Assembly (NCBI GenBank): GCA_001179505.1
Contig: CDMY01000456.1
Location: 248,001-312,000, forward strand
Reading direction: 5' to 3'
Length of the DNA: 64,000 nt
Origin: Vitrella brassicaformis CCMP3155
Lineage: Eukaryota; Protista; Chromerida
The notes beneath the pieces are model-generated. The model was not told where the DNA came from. It was given only the letters and a program-made list of their open reading frames with translations, and did not search any database. The translations under genes were made by a program, and so were the position numbers. Below, piece by piece: positions 36,483 through 43,104 of this stretch (its first letter is position 1; every line of letters begins with the position of its first letter).

Positions 36483-39400
36483 ATGAGTGATGCTTCCAAG
36501 CTCTCGGCAGCCCTTAACGCCACAGTGGCCGTCATGTCCGACGTCGGTGGGTGCACTCGAGAGGCCGCCAGCGACATCATCGGCAGCGACGCCAGTTGGC
36601 AGAGTTCGTCGATTCATTGGTTGGACGAAATGTGGCTGGTGCTATGTGCCCTGCTCGTCCTCATAATGCAGCCCGCATTTGCAATGTACGTATGTAAGGG
36701 GCTCAGAAAGGACGTTTGTGTGTGTTCGGACGTCGATGTGTGTGTGTGTGTTCCACGTGAGGGGCTGGGCGTTTGGGGTGTTGTGATGCTGCTGCTGCTG
36801 CAGGTTTGAGGCAGGCTGTGTGTCCGACAAGAACGGTGCCTCTGCACACACACATGACATACAATACACGTGTGCGTCTCCGTCCGTCTATCTCTTGACC
36901 AACCAGGTGCCTCCATCATGATAAAGAATGCAGTGGACATACTCGTCTGCTCGTTCGCCTACGCACTTGTCGGTAAGTGCCGGAGAGGAGAAGGGAGAGA
37001 TGAGGCGGGCGGCCTTGATTGTGCGCGGGGCGGGTGGGTATGTTCAGGTTTTCAGCTGTCCTACGCAACGGCCGACCCCTTTGTACCTCCGGATGACATG
37101 GCCAGATTCTTCTTCAATCTGGCATTCGCCAGCACCGGTATGTATGAAGACACACAAAGCGGGGTGTGCGCAGATGACTGTCTGTTTCTCCATCACCGTT
37201 TGTGACAGCCGCCACGATCCTGAGTGGTGCGTTGGCGGAGAGGCTTCGTTTGAACGCCTACATCATTCTTACTCTTGCTGTCGGCAGCGTCATCTACCCC
37301 ATCGTGACGGTACGTATGTGGCAGTCACTTCCGATTCATTTCCGCCATGCGTGTGGTGTGGTGTCTCAGTGGTGGGTGTGGGCCGATGACGGTGAGCAAT
37401 CGGACGGACAAGAGGGCACATTAGCCTGGCATGTATGAATGCATTGGTGCGTGGCTGCACTGGCTGGCTGCAGGTCTCCTGCAGAAACAAGGGTACATAG
37501 ACTTCGCTGGCGGCAGTGTGGTGCACGTCTTGGGGGGCGTTGGCGCCCTCACTGCCGCAGCGATGCTCGGCCCACGTGTGGGGCGATACCCGGAGTACTC
37601 TCCGTGGGACATGCCCGTGCTGCGTCGACTGCTCGGTCGAAGCCTGGACCCCGACCAATACATGCTTCCGCCGGGATTGCCGGCCATTGAAGACGCACCA
37701 CACCCCTTCCGCATCGTCTCAGGCACCCTCTTTCTATGGTCTGTCTGTTATATCTTGGATACTGATAACGCCTGGACATTGTGTTTGTGTTTGTGTGTTA
37801 CGTACAGGGGTGCGCGGTACGGATTCAATTGTGGCTCGACCATGGGTGTGACTGCCGGCGGTGCCTACGTGGCTGCCCGTGTGGCGGTGATCACAACGAT
37901 GGGTGCCGTGGGCGGCGGGCTGGCCATCGTTGCCATCAGCATGATGTCCAGGCGATGGGTGCCTCTGCGTCTCTGCACGGGCATACTCGCGGGGCTCGTG
38001 TCCATCACGGCTGGTTAGTCTGAGAGACATGAAGCGGAGCTCTTGATCGTGTTTATCGTGTGTCGGTAGGTGCGCCTCACCTCGGAATGTACGAGGCAAT
38101 GGCTGTGGGTGCTCTTGGGGCGTTGTTGGCCCGGCTGTCGACGGCAATCCTCAAGTGGTGCCAGATCGACGATGTCGTCGGTGCCTTCGGCACGCACGGC
38201 GTGCCCGGTGCGTGGGGTGTGTTGGCCGTGGCGCTGTTCGCCAAGAGTGCCAGCTGCGGAGACTATACCACGGTTGGGCTTTTCTATGCCGCCACCAAGG
38301 AGCAAGTCAACGAGGTCACAGACAGACAGACAGACAGAGAGAGACCGCGGACCTGGATGGATGCCCTCCTGTGTGTGTGTGTGATTTCGATGTCTAGGCT
38401 TTTGTGCAGGTCGGTGTGCAGCTTGGCGGCCTCCTGCTGATCATTGCCTTCACGTCTGCATCAGTCGCCATCGTCTGCTTTGTACGTTACGTGATCATAC
38501 AGACACGAACGTCACATAGCGGATCGCATGTCCATCTCTGTTGTGTGCAGGTGCTGAATCAGACGCCGATGAAGCTGCGTGTGTCGTTCGGAGAGGAACT
38601 GACGGGCCTGGACTGGATGGAGCAGTCCATAAAGAACATGCATCAGGCCAGAATGGAGGTCGTCGAGTCCCTCGTGCACTCCGTCGCGGGACTTAACGCA
38701 GGTGTTATTGAGCATGACACCATCAATTGTTATCTTATAACTAGCATTTGTCTGTGTGTCCGGGCGGTCAGAATGGGACCTATCGTGAGAAAGATAGCTG
38801 CGCTGATGTGTCTCATGCATTGATATACATCCCATCTGGTGCTTGCCAATGTCAGGTGGTTGTCGGCTGAAGCGAAGCGCTTGAAGCTCCACAAGTCGAC
38901 TTCACGAACAATGGAGGTGCGTGCAGACAGCCTGATAAGAATCCTTTGCCTGTCGCTTCTTGCCATCGATCAGACGACTTTGAATCACTTCGTCAAGGCC
39001 AGCCGAGCCCTCAGAGATGCTTCGGCGCAGAGACGGTCCAGCACGGGCTCAGAGGTGGATGTTGAGCTGCCTGTCTTCATGCCCCTGGGCACTCTGGTGG
39101 TGCTCGTGCATCGCGCGGAGATGAAGAAAGGCGTAAGAGGCAGCTGGGGAGACACCACTGCAGTGAAACACGAAGCCACACGTCCCTCTCTCTGCACGTG
39201 TGTCTGCTACTTACTGCAGGTGAGCACACCGGATGACCGAACCTTCTTTGTCGAAGTCAAGCTTGTCCGGTCAGCACTGTGTAGTCAGCCGCACCTCTGA
39301 CATATGTGTGTGTCATGTCATGCGTGCCACTAGTGGCGACCCCGACAGCGCCGATGGCACAGCCAAACTGCAGCCCCACCCCGGATTCCGCAGAGCACGA

Positions 39401-40829
39401 GACACAGCCATCGTGGACGAAGCTGCGACCCAATCCGCATACGTGTGGGAAGAGGTGGGCCAGGACCCATTAATGGATCATGACAGCCTTCTGGTCTGTG
39501 ACAGTTTGTCTGTCTGTCTGTCTGTCTAGCCGTTGGTGTTTGCGAATGTGGGCAATGAGGTGGTCAACGATTTACTCATACAGGTGGGCCGCTATCGACA
39601 CACGCCACATATACGTGTGTGTGTGTGTGTGTGTGTGTGATAACTTGACTAGTTCAATGTGTACGATGCCCGCTCGCTTCGGGACATGCGCGGCGACTGC
39701 TTCGGTTCGTCACTAGCGACCAAGGCACTCGCCAATGACGTCAGCGCCGCCGCCGCGGGGTTCAAGAAGAAACACTCGATAATGACAGGCAGCGTACGGA
39801 TGGGCATACCCGATGCACGCCCTTGCGGACGGACAATGCACCCTTCAGGCGTTTTACCCAGCCTGCCCGTCCTCTTGGGAGCAGGACCTGGCCGGAGACG
39901 ACTTCCAAAAGGACATGATGGAAGGGGTCAGCACAGCACCGTGAGACACCAACAGACACTCTCATCGTGTACTCATGGAAGGAAGTATGGATACATACGT
40001 CTTTGTGTTGTCAGGGCGTCAAGACCAAAGAGCTGTGTCGGGCCATCAGGCTGGAGGCGCGACGGAGTAGCCTCGCCAGGCGAATGTGCGTAAGGACGGT
40101 GCACCGCACTGCACTCACAGAAACCTGCACAGACCTGTTCGCCCACCCAGGTCATTTATGCGCAAGGACGACGAGAAGAAAATCATTATTACCGGCAAGC
40201 TGTACTTCTCCATCGAGTTCAGGACGAGCGATTTTGACAAGGTCGGTCACACGGACACTCACCGTGTGTCGCTCACAACGTCCCGTTATCCTGTGCATCC
40301 ACCCCTCCATCCGTCCGTGCAGTCTCTGTCGAAAGCTATATCATCGCTGGTGGCGGTCGACAAGCAGCTGGAGGCCAGAAAGCGCAATTCGATACCAAGT
40401 CAGCCAACAAGAGTTCATCTATGTGTGTATGTGTGTGGCATGGACCACCTACGCAGCTTCTGAGCTCGACCTGCCCATAAGTCCGACTGCGGGCAAGGGC
40501 TCTCTGTCCACCTTCAGCCGACGCACACACAACTTGATAAAAAAGGGAATCGCCAGGATTGGTGAGAGCAAGACACAACGCCTCAGCTGTCTCACCTCAC
40601 GTCGTGTGTGCGTGTGTGTGCAGCCAAGTCGATGGCTCGTTCGCCCAAAAGCGGCGATGCGCTCCAGCCAGGTCTGGATATGTTCGCTCACCGGCGGAGG
40701 GCCTCCGTCGGCCGCTGCTCCGTCATGAGCAACGACGAGCGGGTCTCACTCGAGGTCGACGCACCGCCCCTCCAAGCCGCACCGTCTGCAGCACACCTCC
40801 TCGCCGCGCCCAAAATCATCAGCTCTTAA
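36483..40829 (+). CDS. AMT: Ammonium transporter (Amt) with long C-terminal extension containing a C2-like domain
   Basis: FEAG..KN..IMIKN, FNLAFAST..ILSGALAER, DFAGGSVVH, YGFNCGS, DDVVGAFGTHGVPG, LRVSFGEELTGLD, followed by a phase-consistent exon chain to TAA at 40827-40829. Confidence 0.93.
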
Positions 40830-41022
40830 AGGGGGCAAGTCGGTCTCATCGGCCTTGCCCACACCAGTCGGGGCATCCACCGCATTCCTCAACGATGCCG
40901 TTGTGGACGAGACGTCGGGAGCCAAGACTCCCGTCACCAATCGGATAACAAGATACCGCACCAAAGGCAGCACACCAAGCCCCGGTAGCAGATGCCGTGC
41001 GGCGGTGGAAGGCGATGGGAAG

Positions 41023-43104
41023 ATGGAGACGAAGCGGGCCAAGAAGGAGCTGGCTGACAAGAAGAATGACAGCCTCGCGGTCATTTCGGATGTGCTGCGC
41101 GATGACGCTGAGTTTGCACTGCCCAGCCGCATACAGAGGCACGCGGAGCGCATCAAGAACAAAAAGGCCACAGGTGAGTCGACTCGTCGATGGCCGGAGG
41201 GAGTGAGACACGCGAGTGAGCGGCGTGTGTTGCGTGTGCATGGATGGCCCAGGCTCCATGGAGCTGTCCGATGAGCAGAGACACATGCTGGAGAGCGAGG
41301 CGGCGGCCATGGAGCAGGAGGAGATGGCCAGCATACGAATTGCTGCACTTGAAGGACAGACTCTCAACACATCCAAGTACCCCCACACCTTCATCCCTTA
41401 CGCATACATCTACACCTGGCTGTGTATGTGATGTGTGTGGCCGCAGAACCTCGCCTCAGAGAGACAGCAGCGGCGTCAAGTTCAAGAGCAACGCCACAGA
41501 CATGGACGAAGCCGAGGACGGCGAATGGAGAGGTACACCTGTATCCTGACCTGTAACAACTCCCCAATGACCTACCTGTCCTGTGTGTACTGACTGGGGA
41601 TGCACAAATGCTTCAAAGACGAAACCCGTCAGGCGCAGCGCAAAGCGAAGCTGCTGAACCGCAAGGTTACTGGTCAGCTGATGACAGCCGCCCAGAAGGA
41701 GGAGCTCAACAGGGCAACACAAGAAGACATGGAAGATGGCGACGAGGCTGAGGATGACGAGTACGACAAAGATCACCCCAATCTTGTGTCATTCAAGTCG
41801 CGGGAGACTGATATCGACAGCGACGCCGATGACTGGAAAGGTGCACCCAGCACAATCCTCACCGTGCATTTGGACGTGTGTTTGTGTGCAGATGAGTCCC
41901 GCCACGCCAAGCGAAAACTCAAACTGATGGGCAGGAAAGCTACAGGACAAATCCGGATGTCGCAAACACAGAAGAACGAGCTGCGCCGTGCATCAGAGGA
42001 GGCTATGGACGACGGCGACTCAGATGTTGGCAGCAATGACGCCGATGGCCATGATGACCAGCCACCAAGAGGCGCGAACTTGGTTCAGTTCCAGTCCCTT
42101 CAGACAGATATCGACAGCGACGCCGACTGGCAAGGTGCCTGAGACATGTCTGCTACACACACACACATGTACACTGCTCGTCCTTTCCTCGACTACAGAT
42201 GCATCCCAGCATGCTCAGCGTAGCGCAAAGCTGATTGCGAGAAAAGCTACTGGGCAGCTACAAATGACGGAGTTGCAGAGGAGGGAGCTGGAAGATGACG
42301 ACGAGGAGGAGGAAAGGGGAGAGTTGCAAGACGACCAGCCTTACCTTGTCTCCTTCAAGACACAAGAAACAGACATCGACAGCAACCCCGACTGGCTGGG
42401 TACAGTACGGCCCACATGCGCATCGTGTGTCCCTGTGTTCACACGTGTCTCCCTACCTGTGTCTCTCAGCAACAGGTCGGTTAAGGCGCGCAGGGCGAAG
42501 CTGAAGGCCCGGCAGACGACGGGCCAGGTTAAGCTCACGAGTAGCCAGAAGGACGCTCTCAGTAGTCTGGCACAGAAAAATGACGACGATGACGATACTG
42601 GTAGCGAAGACGCCTCTCCGCAGCAGGACGGAGGGGGCGACGCAGACGCCGTCCATTTAGTGACCTTCCGTAGCAGACCGCAGAGCGTAGTCAGCGACAT
42701 GGACGATCAAGAGTGGAAAAGTAGGCAGGCAATGCAGAAGATCGACCACCCTTCGCCGCAGCACACGTGTGTGTCTGCATGTCTCCGCTGCTCAGCAAGC
42801 GGTCGGGCAGAGGCGCGCAGGGCGAAGCTGAAGGAGCGCAAGGCGACAGGACAGTTGAAGCTCACCTCAGACCAGAAAGATGCCCTCGCCCATGCCGCGT
42901 CCGAAGAGCTGGAGGAAGAGGATACACCCGAGAGGAACGTCTCTGGTGCAGAAGATCGGCACATCGGAGGGGACGGGTGGCGGGGTGAATTTCGCCCACC
43001 TGAATGGCCAAGGCGCTGACGACCAGGACGGTTTCTATGCCGGGTCACAAATCGTCTTTGACTTCGCTCGGTGGGGTGAGGTTTCCTCTGTGGGACACAT
43101 TTGA
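41023..43104 (+). CDS. Novel tandem-repeat protein (six ~70-aa repeats, roughly one per exon); may be continuous with the Amt gene
   Basis: Repeated R-x-AKL-xx-RKATGQ-LxLT-xxQKxxL / acidic linker / LVxFxS-xx-TDIDSD-x-DW. Repeats are separated by phase-1 introns. The end is 43019 or 43104 depending on a +1 shift near 42970. Confidence 0.75.

What the first reader, a model, noticed from the sequence alone, without database searches (positions are those of the whole stretch)
36483..40829. Ammonium transporter fused to a C2-like domain
Seen: after a complete Amt core with both pore histidines, a phase-consistent exon chain gives GTLVVLVHRAE..DDRTFFVEVKLV..RARDTAIV..AYVWEEPLVF..LLIQFNVYDARSLRD..(long insert)..ITGKLYFSIEF. 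Known: this strand pattern matches C2 Ca2+/phospholipid-binding domains. The Amt fusions I know are to kinases, cNMP or other signalling modules, not C2. Inference: a Ca2+- or lipid-regulated ammonium transporter or transceptor.
Basis: partly seen in the sequence, partly recalled or inferred. Interest (0 to 1): 0.8.

Follow-up and report, generated by a model that had tools for sequence, protein, structure and literature searches.

The report
Ammonium transporter with built-in C2 domain
This gene of the alga Vitrella brassicaformis joins a complete ammonium transporter to a C2-type domain too diverged for sequence searches, a layout shared with dinoflagellates and not found in the literature I could search, but the domain lacks the usual calcium-binding residues.

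Summary
Window 36483-40829 (+) is one 24-exon gene of Vitrella brassicaformis, public model CEM14635.1. That model matches the window 100% but lacks the first two exons, which encode TM1.

- **Transporter:** the Amt core is complete, with twin His, Phe gate and the W148, D160 and S219 equivalents. One oddity: Arg stands at the AmtB-W212 pore position, unique among 236 homologues.
- **Tail:** Pfam finds no C2. AlphaFold models of this tail (pLDDT 75) and of a dinoflagellate homologue (pLDDT 89) match only C2 domains. Z is 13.2 over 129/129 residues of E-Syt1 C2A, and the top 50 of an exhaustive PDB scan are all C2.
- **Distribution:** the same Amt + helical linker + C2 layout occurs in a Vitrella paralogue and in dinoflagellate transcripts with uninterrupted ORFs. 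So the fusion is not an annotation artefact.
- **Calcium:** the canonical Ca2+-ligand aspartates are not conserved in the family, so Ca2+ control is unsupported. I read the domain as a Ca2+-independent regulatory or docking module on the cytosolic C-terminus.

No Vitrella RNA data could be found. First readers of this scan noted the same architecture on three other pieces of this genome. No paper describing an Amt-C2 fusion was found.

The parts
36483..36685 (+). Exon 1: start codon, N-terminal segment and most of TM1 (..LVLIMQPAFAM). Missing from the public model.
   Evidence: First ATG of the frame. GT donor at 36686. Collinear with the N-termini of P0005, P0008 and P0009.
36804..36835 (+). 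Exon 2 (FEAGCVSDKN). Missing from the public model.
   Evidence: AG/GT borders and phase fit. Matches FEAGCV..KN of homologues.
36907..38481 (+). Exons 3-10, the Amt core: 36907-36972, 37048-37137, 37209-37309, 37370-37391, 37474-37738, 37808-38013, 38070-38314, 38398-38481.
   Evidence: Pfam PF00909 on single exons and on P0001, E=1e-65. Exact mapping.
37524..37526 (+). Codon of the first pore histidine (AmtB H168 equivalent).
   Evidence: Read from the sequence. This alignment column is His in 232 of 236 homologues.
37815..37817 (+). CGG = Arg at the AmtB-W212-equivalent pore position (GARYGFNCGS).
   Evidence: Arg in 1 of 236 aligned Amt homologues, Trp in 226. Two DNA runs show no differing letters.
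38195..38197 (+). Codon of the second pore histidine (AmtB H318 equivalent).
38551..39087 (+). End of the Amt domain (GLDWME) and the linker to the C2 domain: exon 38551-38701, micro-exon 38772-38784 (EWDLS), exon 38856-38916, and exon 38974- up to 39087.
   Evidence: Exact mapping. The linker, including EWDLSWLS, is conserved in paralogue P0002. The dinoflagellate linker aligns to it.
39088..40226 (+). C2-fold domain (P0001 residues 470-681), spread over exons ending or lying at 39132, 39220-39269, 39334-39454, 39530-39583, 39653-39793, 39849-39926, 40015-40085 and 40151-40241.
   Evidence: AF2 pLDDT 74.9, pTM 0.75. Foldseek top 50 all C2 or C2-like domains or C2-containing proteins, best E=1.6e-6. 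VIA Z=13.2, rmsd 2.7 A, 129/129 residues of 7atp.
40227..40829 (+). C-terminal tail after the C2 domain (exons 40323-40398, 40457-40561, 40624-40829). It is Ser- and basic-rich (e.g. HRRRASVGR). Stop codon at 40827-40829.
   Evidence: Exact mapping. No Pfam hit. Not conserved outside the Vitrella paralogue.

Best explanation
SHOWN. This is one gene of about 896 codons. It encodes a complete 11-helix Amt/Mep-type ammonium transporter, a conserved linker of about 90 residues, a very diverged eight-stranded C2 beta-sandwich, and a Ser- and basic-rich tail that is probably disordered. The model superposes end to end on C2 domains of the cPLA2, PLC-delta and dysferlin-C2A kind, which from my own knowledge are topology II. 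The protein belongs to a family found in Vitrella (at least two paralogues) and in dinoflagellates.

INFERRED. Amt C-termini are cytosolic, so the C2 domain should sit under the inner leaflet, directly after the C-terminal region that regulates Amt trimers allosterically in plants and fungi. The canonical Ca2+-ligand aspartates are not conserved in the family. The 'top' loops vary greatly in length. The best-conserved residues lie on strands 2-4 (E in VEV, FxxPRxT, W), in the opposite loop between strands 4 and 5 (PxGxE), and around strand 6 (IGQ, W). I therefore read the domain as a Ca2+-independent C2, in the manner of the PI3K, PTEN or novel-PKC C2 domains. It would dock the transporter's regulatory C-terminus to the membrane, to the transporter's own cytosolic face, or to a partner, and so set activity or location. 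I do not read it as a Ca2+ switch.

In this particular paralogue the pore carries Arg in place of a near-invariant Trp, so its transport properties may be altered.
For: Gene structure and identity with CEM14635.1. Amt core: Pfam PF00909 and pore or site residues kept. C2 fold: AF2 of P0001:455-692 and of the dinoflagellate P0003:478-640, pLDDT 88.8. Foldseek pdb gives C2 or C2-like matches throughout the top 50. VIA pdb_via gives Z 13.2 over 129/129 residues of 7atp, 125/127 of dysferlin C2A and 123/126 of cPLA2 C2. The exhaustive pdb_via_wide top 50 are all C2 or C2-like domains, Z 9.7-13.2. Language-model neighbours and the ESM Atlas's own model also point to C2, as does the Atlas shape search. 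The fusion is real: dinoflagellate members come from transcriptome assemblies (Trinity, MMETSP), and contigs of 2.3-3.1 kb each hold one uninterrupted ORF covering Amt plus C2. L003 begins with CTCAAG, the last six bases of the dinoflagellate spliced leader. The Vitrella and dinoflagellate tails align collinearly; hhalign gives E=9.7e-5 over 171 columns. Ca2+ ligands are absent at family level: in the alignment to synaptotagmin-7 the DYDRFSRND loop is replaced by a five-residue gap without Asp. Loop lengths are variable and charge is inconsistent.
Against: No Vitrella transcript data could be found, so the exon chain at this locus rests on gene prediction plus conservation. Pfam C2 does not hit this protein, and only 1 of 14 family members gets a weak hit at E=0.012. 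The PDB profile search is not significant, with Syt7 at E about 0.5-1. Common descent with classical C2 domains therefore rests on fold. hhalign probability for Vitrella versus dinoflagellate tails is only 58%, and that comparison included the shared end of the Amt domain. The regulatory or docking role is inference; no lipid, Ca2+ or partner binding was or could be tested. I judged the Ca2+ ligands from sequence alignment and predicted secondary structure, not from superposed coordinates. P0001 itself has DD in loop 1 and D..D..D at the start of loop 3.
Confidence: 0.55

Rival explanations
1. One reading: a classical Ca2+-dependent, phospholipid-binding C2 domain that switches the transporter on or off, or moves it, in response to cytosolic Ca2+.
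For: The fold is C2, and the best structural matches include Ca2+-binding C2 domains such as E-Syt1 C2A, dysferlin C2A and cPLA2. P0001 has DD at the end of loop 1 and YDARSLRDMRGD at the start of loop 3. Related long dinoflagellate Amts carry IQ-like calmodulin motifs in their tails, so Ca2+ control of this Amt clade is plausible in general.
Against: The acidic residues are not conserved in paralogue P0002 or in any dinoflagellate member. In those, loop 3 is five residues shorter than in synaptotagmin-7 and has no Asp pair. In P0001 the candidate residues lie at the start of a 35-residue, paralogue-specific insert, most of it modelled below pLDDT 60.
Confidence: 0.15
2. The protein is an ammonium sensor (receptor or transceptor) rather than a nutrient transporter. 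Ammonium binding in the Amt module would be passed through the helical linker to the C2 module as output, as in the bacterial sensor Amts. In this paralogue the pore Arg would block transport.
For: By sequence, the closest solved structures are the sensor Amts Sd-Amt1 (8qj3, E=7e-36) and Ks-Amt5 (6eu6, E=2e-33), ahead of Mep2 and AmtB. The layout of Amt, helical linker and C-terminal cytosolic module is the same as described in PMC11152129. Arg replaces a Trp kept in 226 of 236 homologues at a pore position.
Against: The published N1/N2 receptor signature is not met. The spacing is 39 instead of 54-60, the [FT] position holds L, M or I, and Q is often N. The same paper places proven transporters such as plant AMT1 in the same sequence cluster. 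A C2 domain is not an enzymatic transducer. The other family members keep the Trp.
Confidence: 0.15
3. The C2 domain is only an address or scaffold. It would bring the transporter to a particular membrane or contact site, or hold trimers in clusters, without affecting transport.
For: Many Ca2+-independent C2 domains act in targeting or protein-protein contacts; this is general knowledge, and examples such as CEP120, Aida and Munc13 C2A appear among the matches. The conserved surface is not the lipid-binding top loops.
Against: Nothing here separates this reading from a regulatory role. The domain directly follows the conserved C-terminal region known to gate Amt trimers.
Confidence: 0.12
4. 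Annotation artefact: the transporter and the C2 protein are two neighbouring genes that the gene predictor joined.
For: There is no RNA evidence for this locus. The junction uses a 13-nt micro-exon, and many alternative GT/AG pairs exist.
Against: The same fusion lies within single uninterrupted ORFs in dinoflagellate transcript contigs. The linker, including the micro-exon peptide EWDLS, is conserved in a Vitrella paralogue. There is no in-frame stop or start signal between the parts, and all introns are GT-AG of 55-88 nt.
Confidence: 0.03

Closest known systems
Bacterial sensor Amts with fused C-terminal modules: Ks-Amt5 (Amt-histidine kinase, PDB 6eu6) and Sd-Amt1 (Amt-HAMP-GGDEF, PDB 8qj3). 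Papers PMC5764959 and PMC11152129.
   Same: An Amt core with all pore motifs, a helical linker, and a folded cytosolic module at the C-terminus. They are the best sequence matches among solved structures.
   Different: This gene is eukaryotic. Its module is a C2 sandwich, not an enzyme. The N1/N2 receptor signature is only partly kept.
Plant AMT1 and fungal Mep2, regulated through their cytosolic C-terminal region (e.g. PMC4852598, PMC13745463).
   Same: Eukaryotic Amt trimers whose short C-terminal region controls activity. The tail here also has basophilic Ser sites (RRRAS).
   Different: Those tails are short, about 50-80 residues, without a folded domain. Here about 430 residues follow the core and include a C2 fold.
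Membrane-anchored C2 proteins: extended synaptotagmins, ferlins, MCTPs.
   Same: A membrane anchor plus a cytosolic C2 domain. The best structural match is plant E-Syt1 C2A: Z 13.2, rmsd 2.7 A, 129/129 residues.
   Different: Here a single C2 follows an 11-helix transporter. Pfam C2 does not detect it. The Ca2+-ligand aspartates are not conserved.
Ca2+-independent C2 domains: PI3K C2, CEP120 C2, Aida C2, novel-PKC C2.
   Same: The same fold with comparable scores, e.g. PI3K-gamma Z 12.7, CEP120 Z 12.5, PKC-epsilon Z 10.8. No full set of acidic ligands.
   Different: No detectable sequence relationship. The host protein is a transporter.

Membership tests
Amt/Mep/Rh ammonium transporters (Pfam PF00909) | Significant match to the family profile | tested here: met
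   P0001 E=1.1e-65, 222 bits against a cut-off of 23.2. Single exons also hit.
Amt/Mep/Rh ammonium transporters (Pfam PF00909) | Twin-His pore pair (AmtB H168 and H318) | tested here: met
   His at both alignment columns; codons 37524-37526 and 38195-38197.
Amt/Mep/Rh ammonium transporters (Pfam PF00909) | Recruitment site and Phe gate (AmtB F103, F107, W148, F215, S219, D160) | tested here: met
   All six equivalents are kept in P0001. The AmtB numbering comes from my own knowledge, anchored on the 1u77 match of chain residues 103-200.
Amt/Mep/Rh ammonium transporters (Pfam PF00909) | Hydrophobic pore lining (AmtB W212) | tested here: not met
   Arg in P0001. Trp in 226 of 236 homologues and in all 12 other family members.
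Amt/Mep/Rh ammonium transporters (Pfam PF00909) | Complete set of 11 helices including TM1 | tested here: met
   TM1 is absent from the public model. It is encoded by exons 36483-36685 and 36804-35, which are collinear with homologues. I ran no transmembrane predictor.
C2 domain (Pfam PF00168, C2 superfamily) | Match to the sequence profile | tested here: not met
   No hit on P0001-P0011 at E<=0.1, nor on the tail at E<=1. One of 14 members hits at E=0.012. The PDB profile search finds Syt7 C2A only at E 0.5-1.
C2 domain (Pfam PF00168, C2 superfamily) | Eight-stranded beta-sandwich that superposes on solved C2 domains | tested here: met
   Z 13.2, rmsd 2.7 A, 129/129 residues of 7atp. In the exhaustive scan of 48,161 chains the top 50 are all C2 or C2-like domains. 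Foldseek E=1.6e-6. The Atlas searches agree.
C2 domain (Pfam PF00168, C2 superfamily) | Five acidic Ca2+ ligands in loops 1 and 3 (defines only the Ca2+-dependent subset) | tested here: not met
   At family level, loop 3 is shortened and lacks the Asp pair and loop 1 is variable. P0001 alone has some acidic residues, in a low-confidence insert. This rests on sequence, not on superposed coordinates.
C2 domain (Pfam PF00168, C2 superfamily) | Phospholipid binding | not testable with these tools
   Domain pI ranges from 4.8 to 9.5 across the family, so no consistent basic character.
Ammonium receptors (AmR, 'cluster 2' of PMC11152129) | N1/N2 signature QX6EX15NX2D[FT]X54-60TX2[ST] | tested here: not met
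   No C2-bearing member matches the strict motif. E, N, D, T and T are kept; the first position is Q or N; the [FT] position is L, M or I. By my count on the window exons the spacing at this locus is 39. Only P0002 matches with relaxed spacing.

The most novel reading that the evidence does not exclude
Dinoflagellates and chromerids have a class of ammonium receptors or transceptors of their own. In it, ammonium occupancy of the Amt module would be passed through the conserved helical linker to a Ca2+-independent C2 module that engages membranes or a partner. This Vitrella paralogue, with Arg in the pore, would be a pure sensor. As in its paralogue CEM02269.1, it might act together with, or be spliced onto, the downstream RKATG/VxF repeat protein.
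Probability: 0.12. Interest if true: 0.8.

Novelty: new variant of a known kind. Interest (0 to 1): 0.6.

Why it matters
Amt proteins fused to cytosolic modules are known in bacteria, where they act as ammonium sensors. In eukaryotes, regulation is known only through short C-terminal tails.

Here a folded C2-type domain, invisible to Pfam, is built into the C-terminus of a whole clade of Amts in dinoflagellates and their photosynthetic relative Vitrella. Dinoflagellates dominate marine nitrogen uptake in blooms and in symbioses.

The finding gives a concrete, testable handle on how these cells control ammonium uptake or sensing. It adds a new host protein to the list of C2-domain architectures. 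It also flags a natural pore variant, Trp to Arg, that would be informative for the transport mechanism.

Tried and rejected
- **Word-index searches with the tails.** P0001 residues 400-700 and P0003 residues 425-650 found only themselves. The family had to be collected from the one exhaustive search, made with an Amt piece, plus a profile search that added P0177-P0180.
- **Sequence detection of C2.** Pfam C2 on whole proteins, tails and all 14 domain members gave essentially nothing. PDB profile searches were not significant.
- **RNA evidence.** No RNA run holds the stretch. Laying X6, X1 and X2 showed only DNA contigs with introns, and X6 touched only microsatellites.
- **Reading on past the stop.** The idea that frame 1 across the stop at 40827-40829 continues the protein, as in paralogue P0002, gets no support. 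The local alignment scores 41 against 32-35 in the other frames. Many GT/AG pairs could join the frames, so splicing cannot be excluded or shown.
- **Sensor-Amt signature.** Not met.
- **Spliced leader.** A full dinoflagellate spliced leader was not found in the fetched contigs. Only a 6-nt remnant stands at the start of L003. The two 3' ends inspected (L003, L005) show no poly(A).
- **Exon 1 against P0002.** BLASTP gave no alignment. A Smith-Waterman check done exon by exon did.
Full report
**Where and what.** The window has about 58% G+C and short GT-AG introns. Earlier notes of this scan name the genome as Vitrella brassicaformis. I confirmed this: the exhaustive protein search with an Amt piece of the window (window:37425-38015) returned P0001. 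P0001 is CEM14635.1 / UniProt A0A0G4FM62 of V. brassicaformis CCMP3155, named only 'Ammonium transporter AmtB-like domain-containing protein'.

P0001 (814 aa) maps with 100% identity onto window 36918-40829 as 22 exons. All 21 introns are GT-AG and 55-88 nt long. The in-script join of exons served only to test identity with the public protein.

**The observation.** Exons 36483-36685 and 36804-36835, joined to 36907-, have proper splice sites and phases. They encode ..LVLIMQPAFAM/FEAGCVSDKN/G-ASIMIKNAVD, which is collinear with the N-termini of homologues; in P0009, for example, residues 17-36, 39-48 and 50-62. The public model therefore lacks TM1, and the true product is about 896 residues.

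The exon after it encodes the sixth strand, SAFYPACPSSW.

**The transporter part.** Pfam PF00909 hits single exons and P0001 at E=1e-65. I aligned 236 homologues. In that alignment P0001 keeps the equivalents of AmtB F103, F107, W148, D160, H168, F215, S219 and H318. The AmtB numbers come from my own knowledge, anchored on the 1u77 match of chain residues 103-200.

One position stands out. The W212 equivalent is Arg (GARYGFNCGS, codon CGG at 37815-37817). It is Trp in 226 of 236 sequences, and no other sequence has Arg. Two independent DNA runs show no difference from the window, so this is not a read error.

By sequence, the nearest solved structures are the bacterial sensor Amts Sd-Amt1 (8qj3) and Ks-Amt5 (6eu6), ahead of Mep2 and AmtB. 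The published receptor signature QX6EX15NX2D[FT]X54-60TX2[ST] (PMC11152129) is not met, however. E, N, D, T and T are kept, the first residue is Q or N, the [FT] position is L, M or I, and the spacing at this locus is 39 by my count.

**The tail is a C2 fold.** Sequence methods fail on it:
- Pfam gives no C2 hit on P0001-P0011 or on the tail.
- Only 1 of 14 domain members gets a weak hit, at E=0.012.
- A profile of the domain finds synaptotagmin-7 C2A in the PDB only at E about 0.5-1.

Structure prediction settles the question:
- P0001:455-692, with a 14-sequence alignment (A3), gives pLDDT 74.9 and pTM 0.75, with eight main strands.
- Foldseek against the PDB returns only C2 or C2-like matches in its top 50. 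The best are plant E-Syt1 C2A at E=1.6e-6, then otoferlin C2A, CAR4, Itch, PLC-delta1 and cPLA2.
- VIA-align gives Z 13.2, rmsd 2.7 A over 129 of 129 residues of 7atp. It also aligns 125/127 residues of dysferlin C2A and 123/126 of cPLA2 C2. From my own knowledge these are topology-II C2 domains.
- The compact dinoflagellate homologue P0003:478-640 folds better, at pLDDT 88.8 and pTM 0.84. In an exhaustive alignment to 48,161 PDB representatives, its top 50 are all C2 or C2-like domains, Z 9.7-13.2.
- Independently, 21 of the 30 nearest clusters by language-model features are PF00168 clusters. The ESM Atlas's own model of P0001 and the Atlas shape search also return C2 proteins.

**The fusion is real and conserved.** The long relatives fall into two groups. 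One is a Vitrella paralogue, P0002 = CEM02269.1, 44% identical in the tail. Its linker is conserved down to the micro-exon peptide EWDLSWLS.

The other group is a set of dinoflagellate proteins:
- Gymnodinium smaydae (Trinity assembly).
- Zooxanthella nutricula (MMETSP1462).
- Alexandrium monilatum (MMETSP0096).
- Many environmental contigs.

These come from transcript assemblies. Contigs L003-L006, of 2.3-3.1 kb, each hold one uninterrupted ORF covering Amt plus C2. L003 starts with CTCAAG, the last six bases of the dinoflagellate spliced leader. That is suggestive only.

The Vitrella and dinoflagellate tails align collinearly, strand by strand. hhalign gives E=9.7e-5 and probability 58% over 171 columns.

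For the Vitrella locus itself I found no RNA. No RNA run holds it, and the runs I laid are DNA. It is answered in the negative for the dinoflagellate homologues.

**Ca2+ and lipid.** Synaptotagmin-7 has the ligand-bearing loop DYDRFSRND-PIG. At that place the family consensus has a five-residue gap and no Asp pair. The other 'top' loop varies from a few to about 40 residues.

Conserved positions instead lie on strands 2-4 (E of VEV, FxxPRxT, W), in the loop between strands 4 and 5 (PxGxE), which lies at the opposite end of the sandwich, and around strand 6 (IGQ, W). Domain pI ranges from 4.8 to 9.5.

P0001 alone has DD in loop 1 and D..D..D at the start of a 35-residue insert found in no other member, most of it modelled below pLDDT 60. 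Ca2+ binding is therefore not a family property and is doubtful here. I judged this from alignments, not from superposed coordinates.

**Mechanism (inferred).** Amt C-termini are cytosolic. In plant AMT1 and fungal Mep2 the short C-terminal region gates the trimer (PMC4852598, PMC13745463). In bacterial sensor Amts a helical linker couples the core to a fused module (PMC11152129).

The C2 domain here follows a conserved linker of about 90 residues at just that place. I read it as a Ca2+-independent docking or regulatory module that sets activity or location.

**Novelty.** No paper in the library joins 'ammonium transporter' and 'C2 domain' in this sense. The survey of fused Amts in PMC11152129 contains neither 'C2 domain' nor 'eukaryot' in its main text. 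Public annotation carries only PF00909. I class this as a new variant of a known kind: an Amt with a fused cytosolic module.

First readers of this scan noted the same architecture on three other pieces of this genome. I did not test those loci.

**Limits.** Exons were searched by reference, and the public protein by its id.

Noticed in passing
window 37815-37817: Arg codon at the AmtB-W212-equivalent pore position. It is unique among 236 aligned Amt homologues, where Trp stands in 226. It could change or block conduction in this paralogue.
   Followed up: partly
window 36483-36917: The public model CEM14635.1 starts at 36918 and lacks TM1. Two upstream exons (36483-36685, 36804-36835) restore it.
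   Followed up: yes
window 40729-42504; L002 7416-9629: Paralogue CEM02269.1 (P0002, 1399 aa) continues after its C2 domain into RK(A/K)TGQ.K / VxF / DTD repeats. One 393-nt exon spans the linker and the first repeat. In the window the same kind of repeat protein is annotated as a separate gene (41023-42504), 194 nt after the Amt stop. The frame-1 ORF open from 40729 overlaps the last Amt exon. Many GT/AG pairs could join them, but no similarity or RNA supports this.
   Followed up: partly
P0014, P0015, P0026 (dinoflagellate or environmental long Amts): A sister group of long Amts lacks the C2 domain. Their tails carry an IQ-like calmodulin-binding motif instead: Pfam IQ E=6e-4 and 3.5e-3, just under the cut-off (P0014 by eye only). 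P0011 shows a faint PH-like hit.
   Followed up: partly
L002 4464-4783 (P0002 residues 314/315): The public model of the paralogue seems to skip part of the Amt core: the sequence jumps from ..LVSVTS to DVVSAWPIHG, losing about one helix. This is probably a gene-model error.
   Followed up: no
L003 1-6 and 117-185: This environmental dinoflagellate contig begins with CTCAAG, the end of the dinoflagellate spliced leader. Its ORF can start 23 codons upstream of the called start, giving an N-terminus like those of the other family members.
   Followed up: partly
one search hit list: Outside the C2-bearing clade, the best-scoring Amt cores in the profile search are marine Synechococcus-type transporters, 35-38% identical over the half of the query that is Amt.
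   Followed up: no
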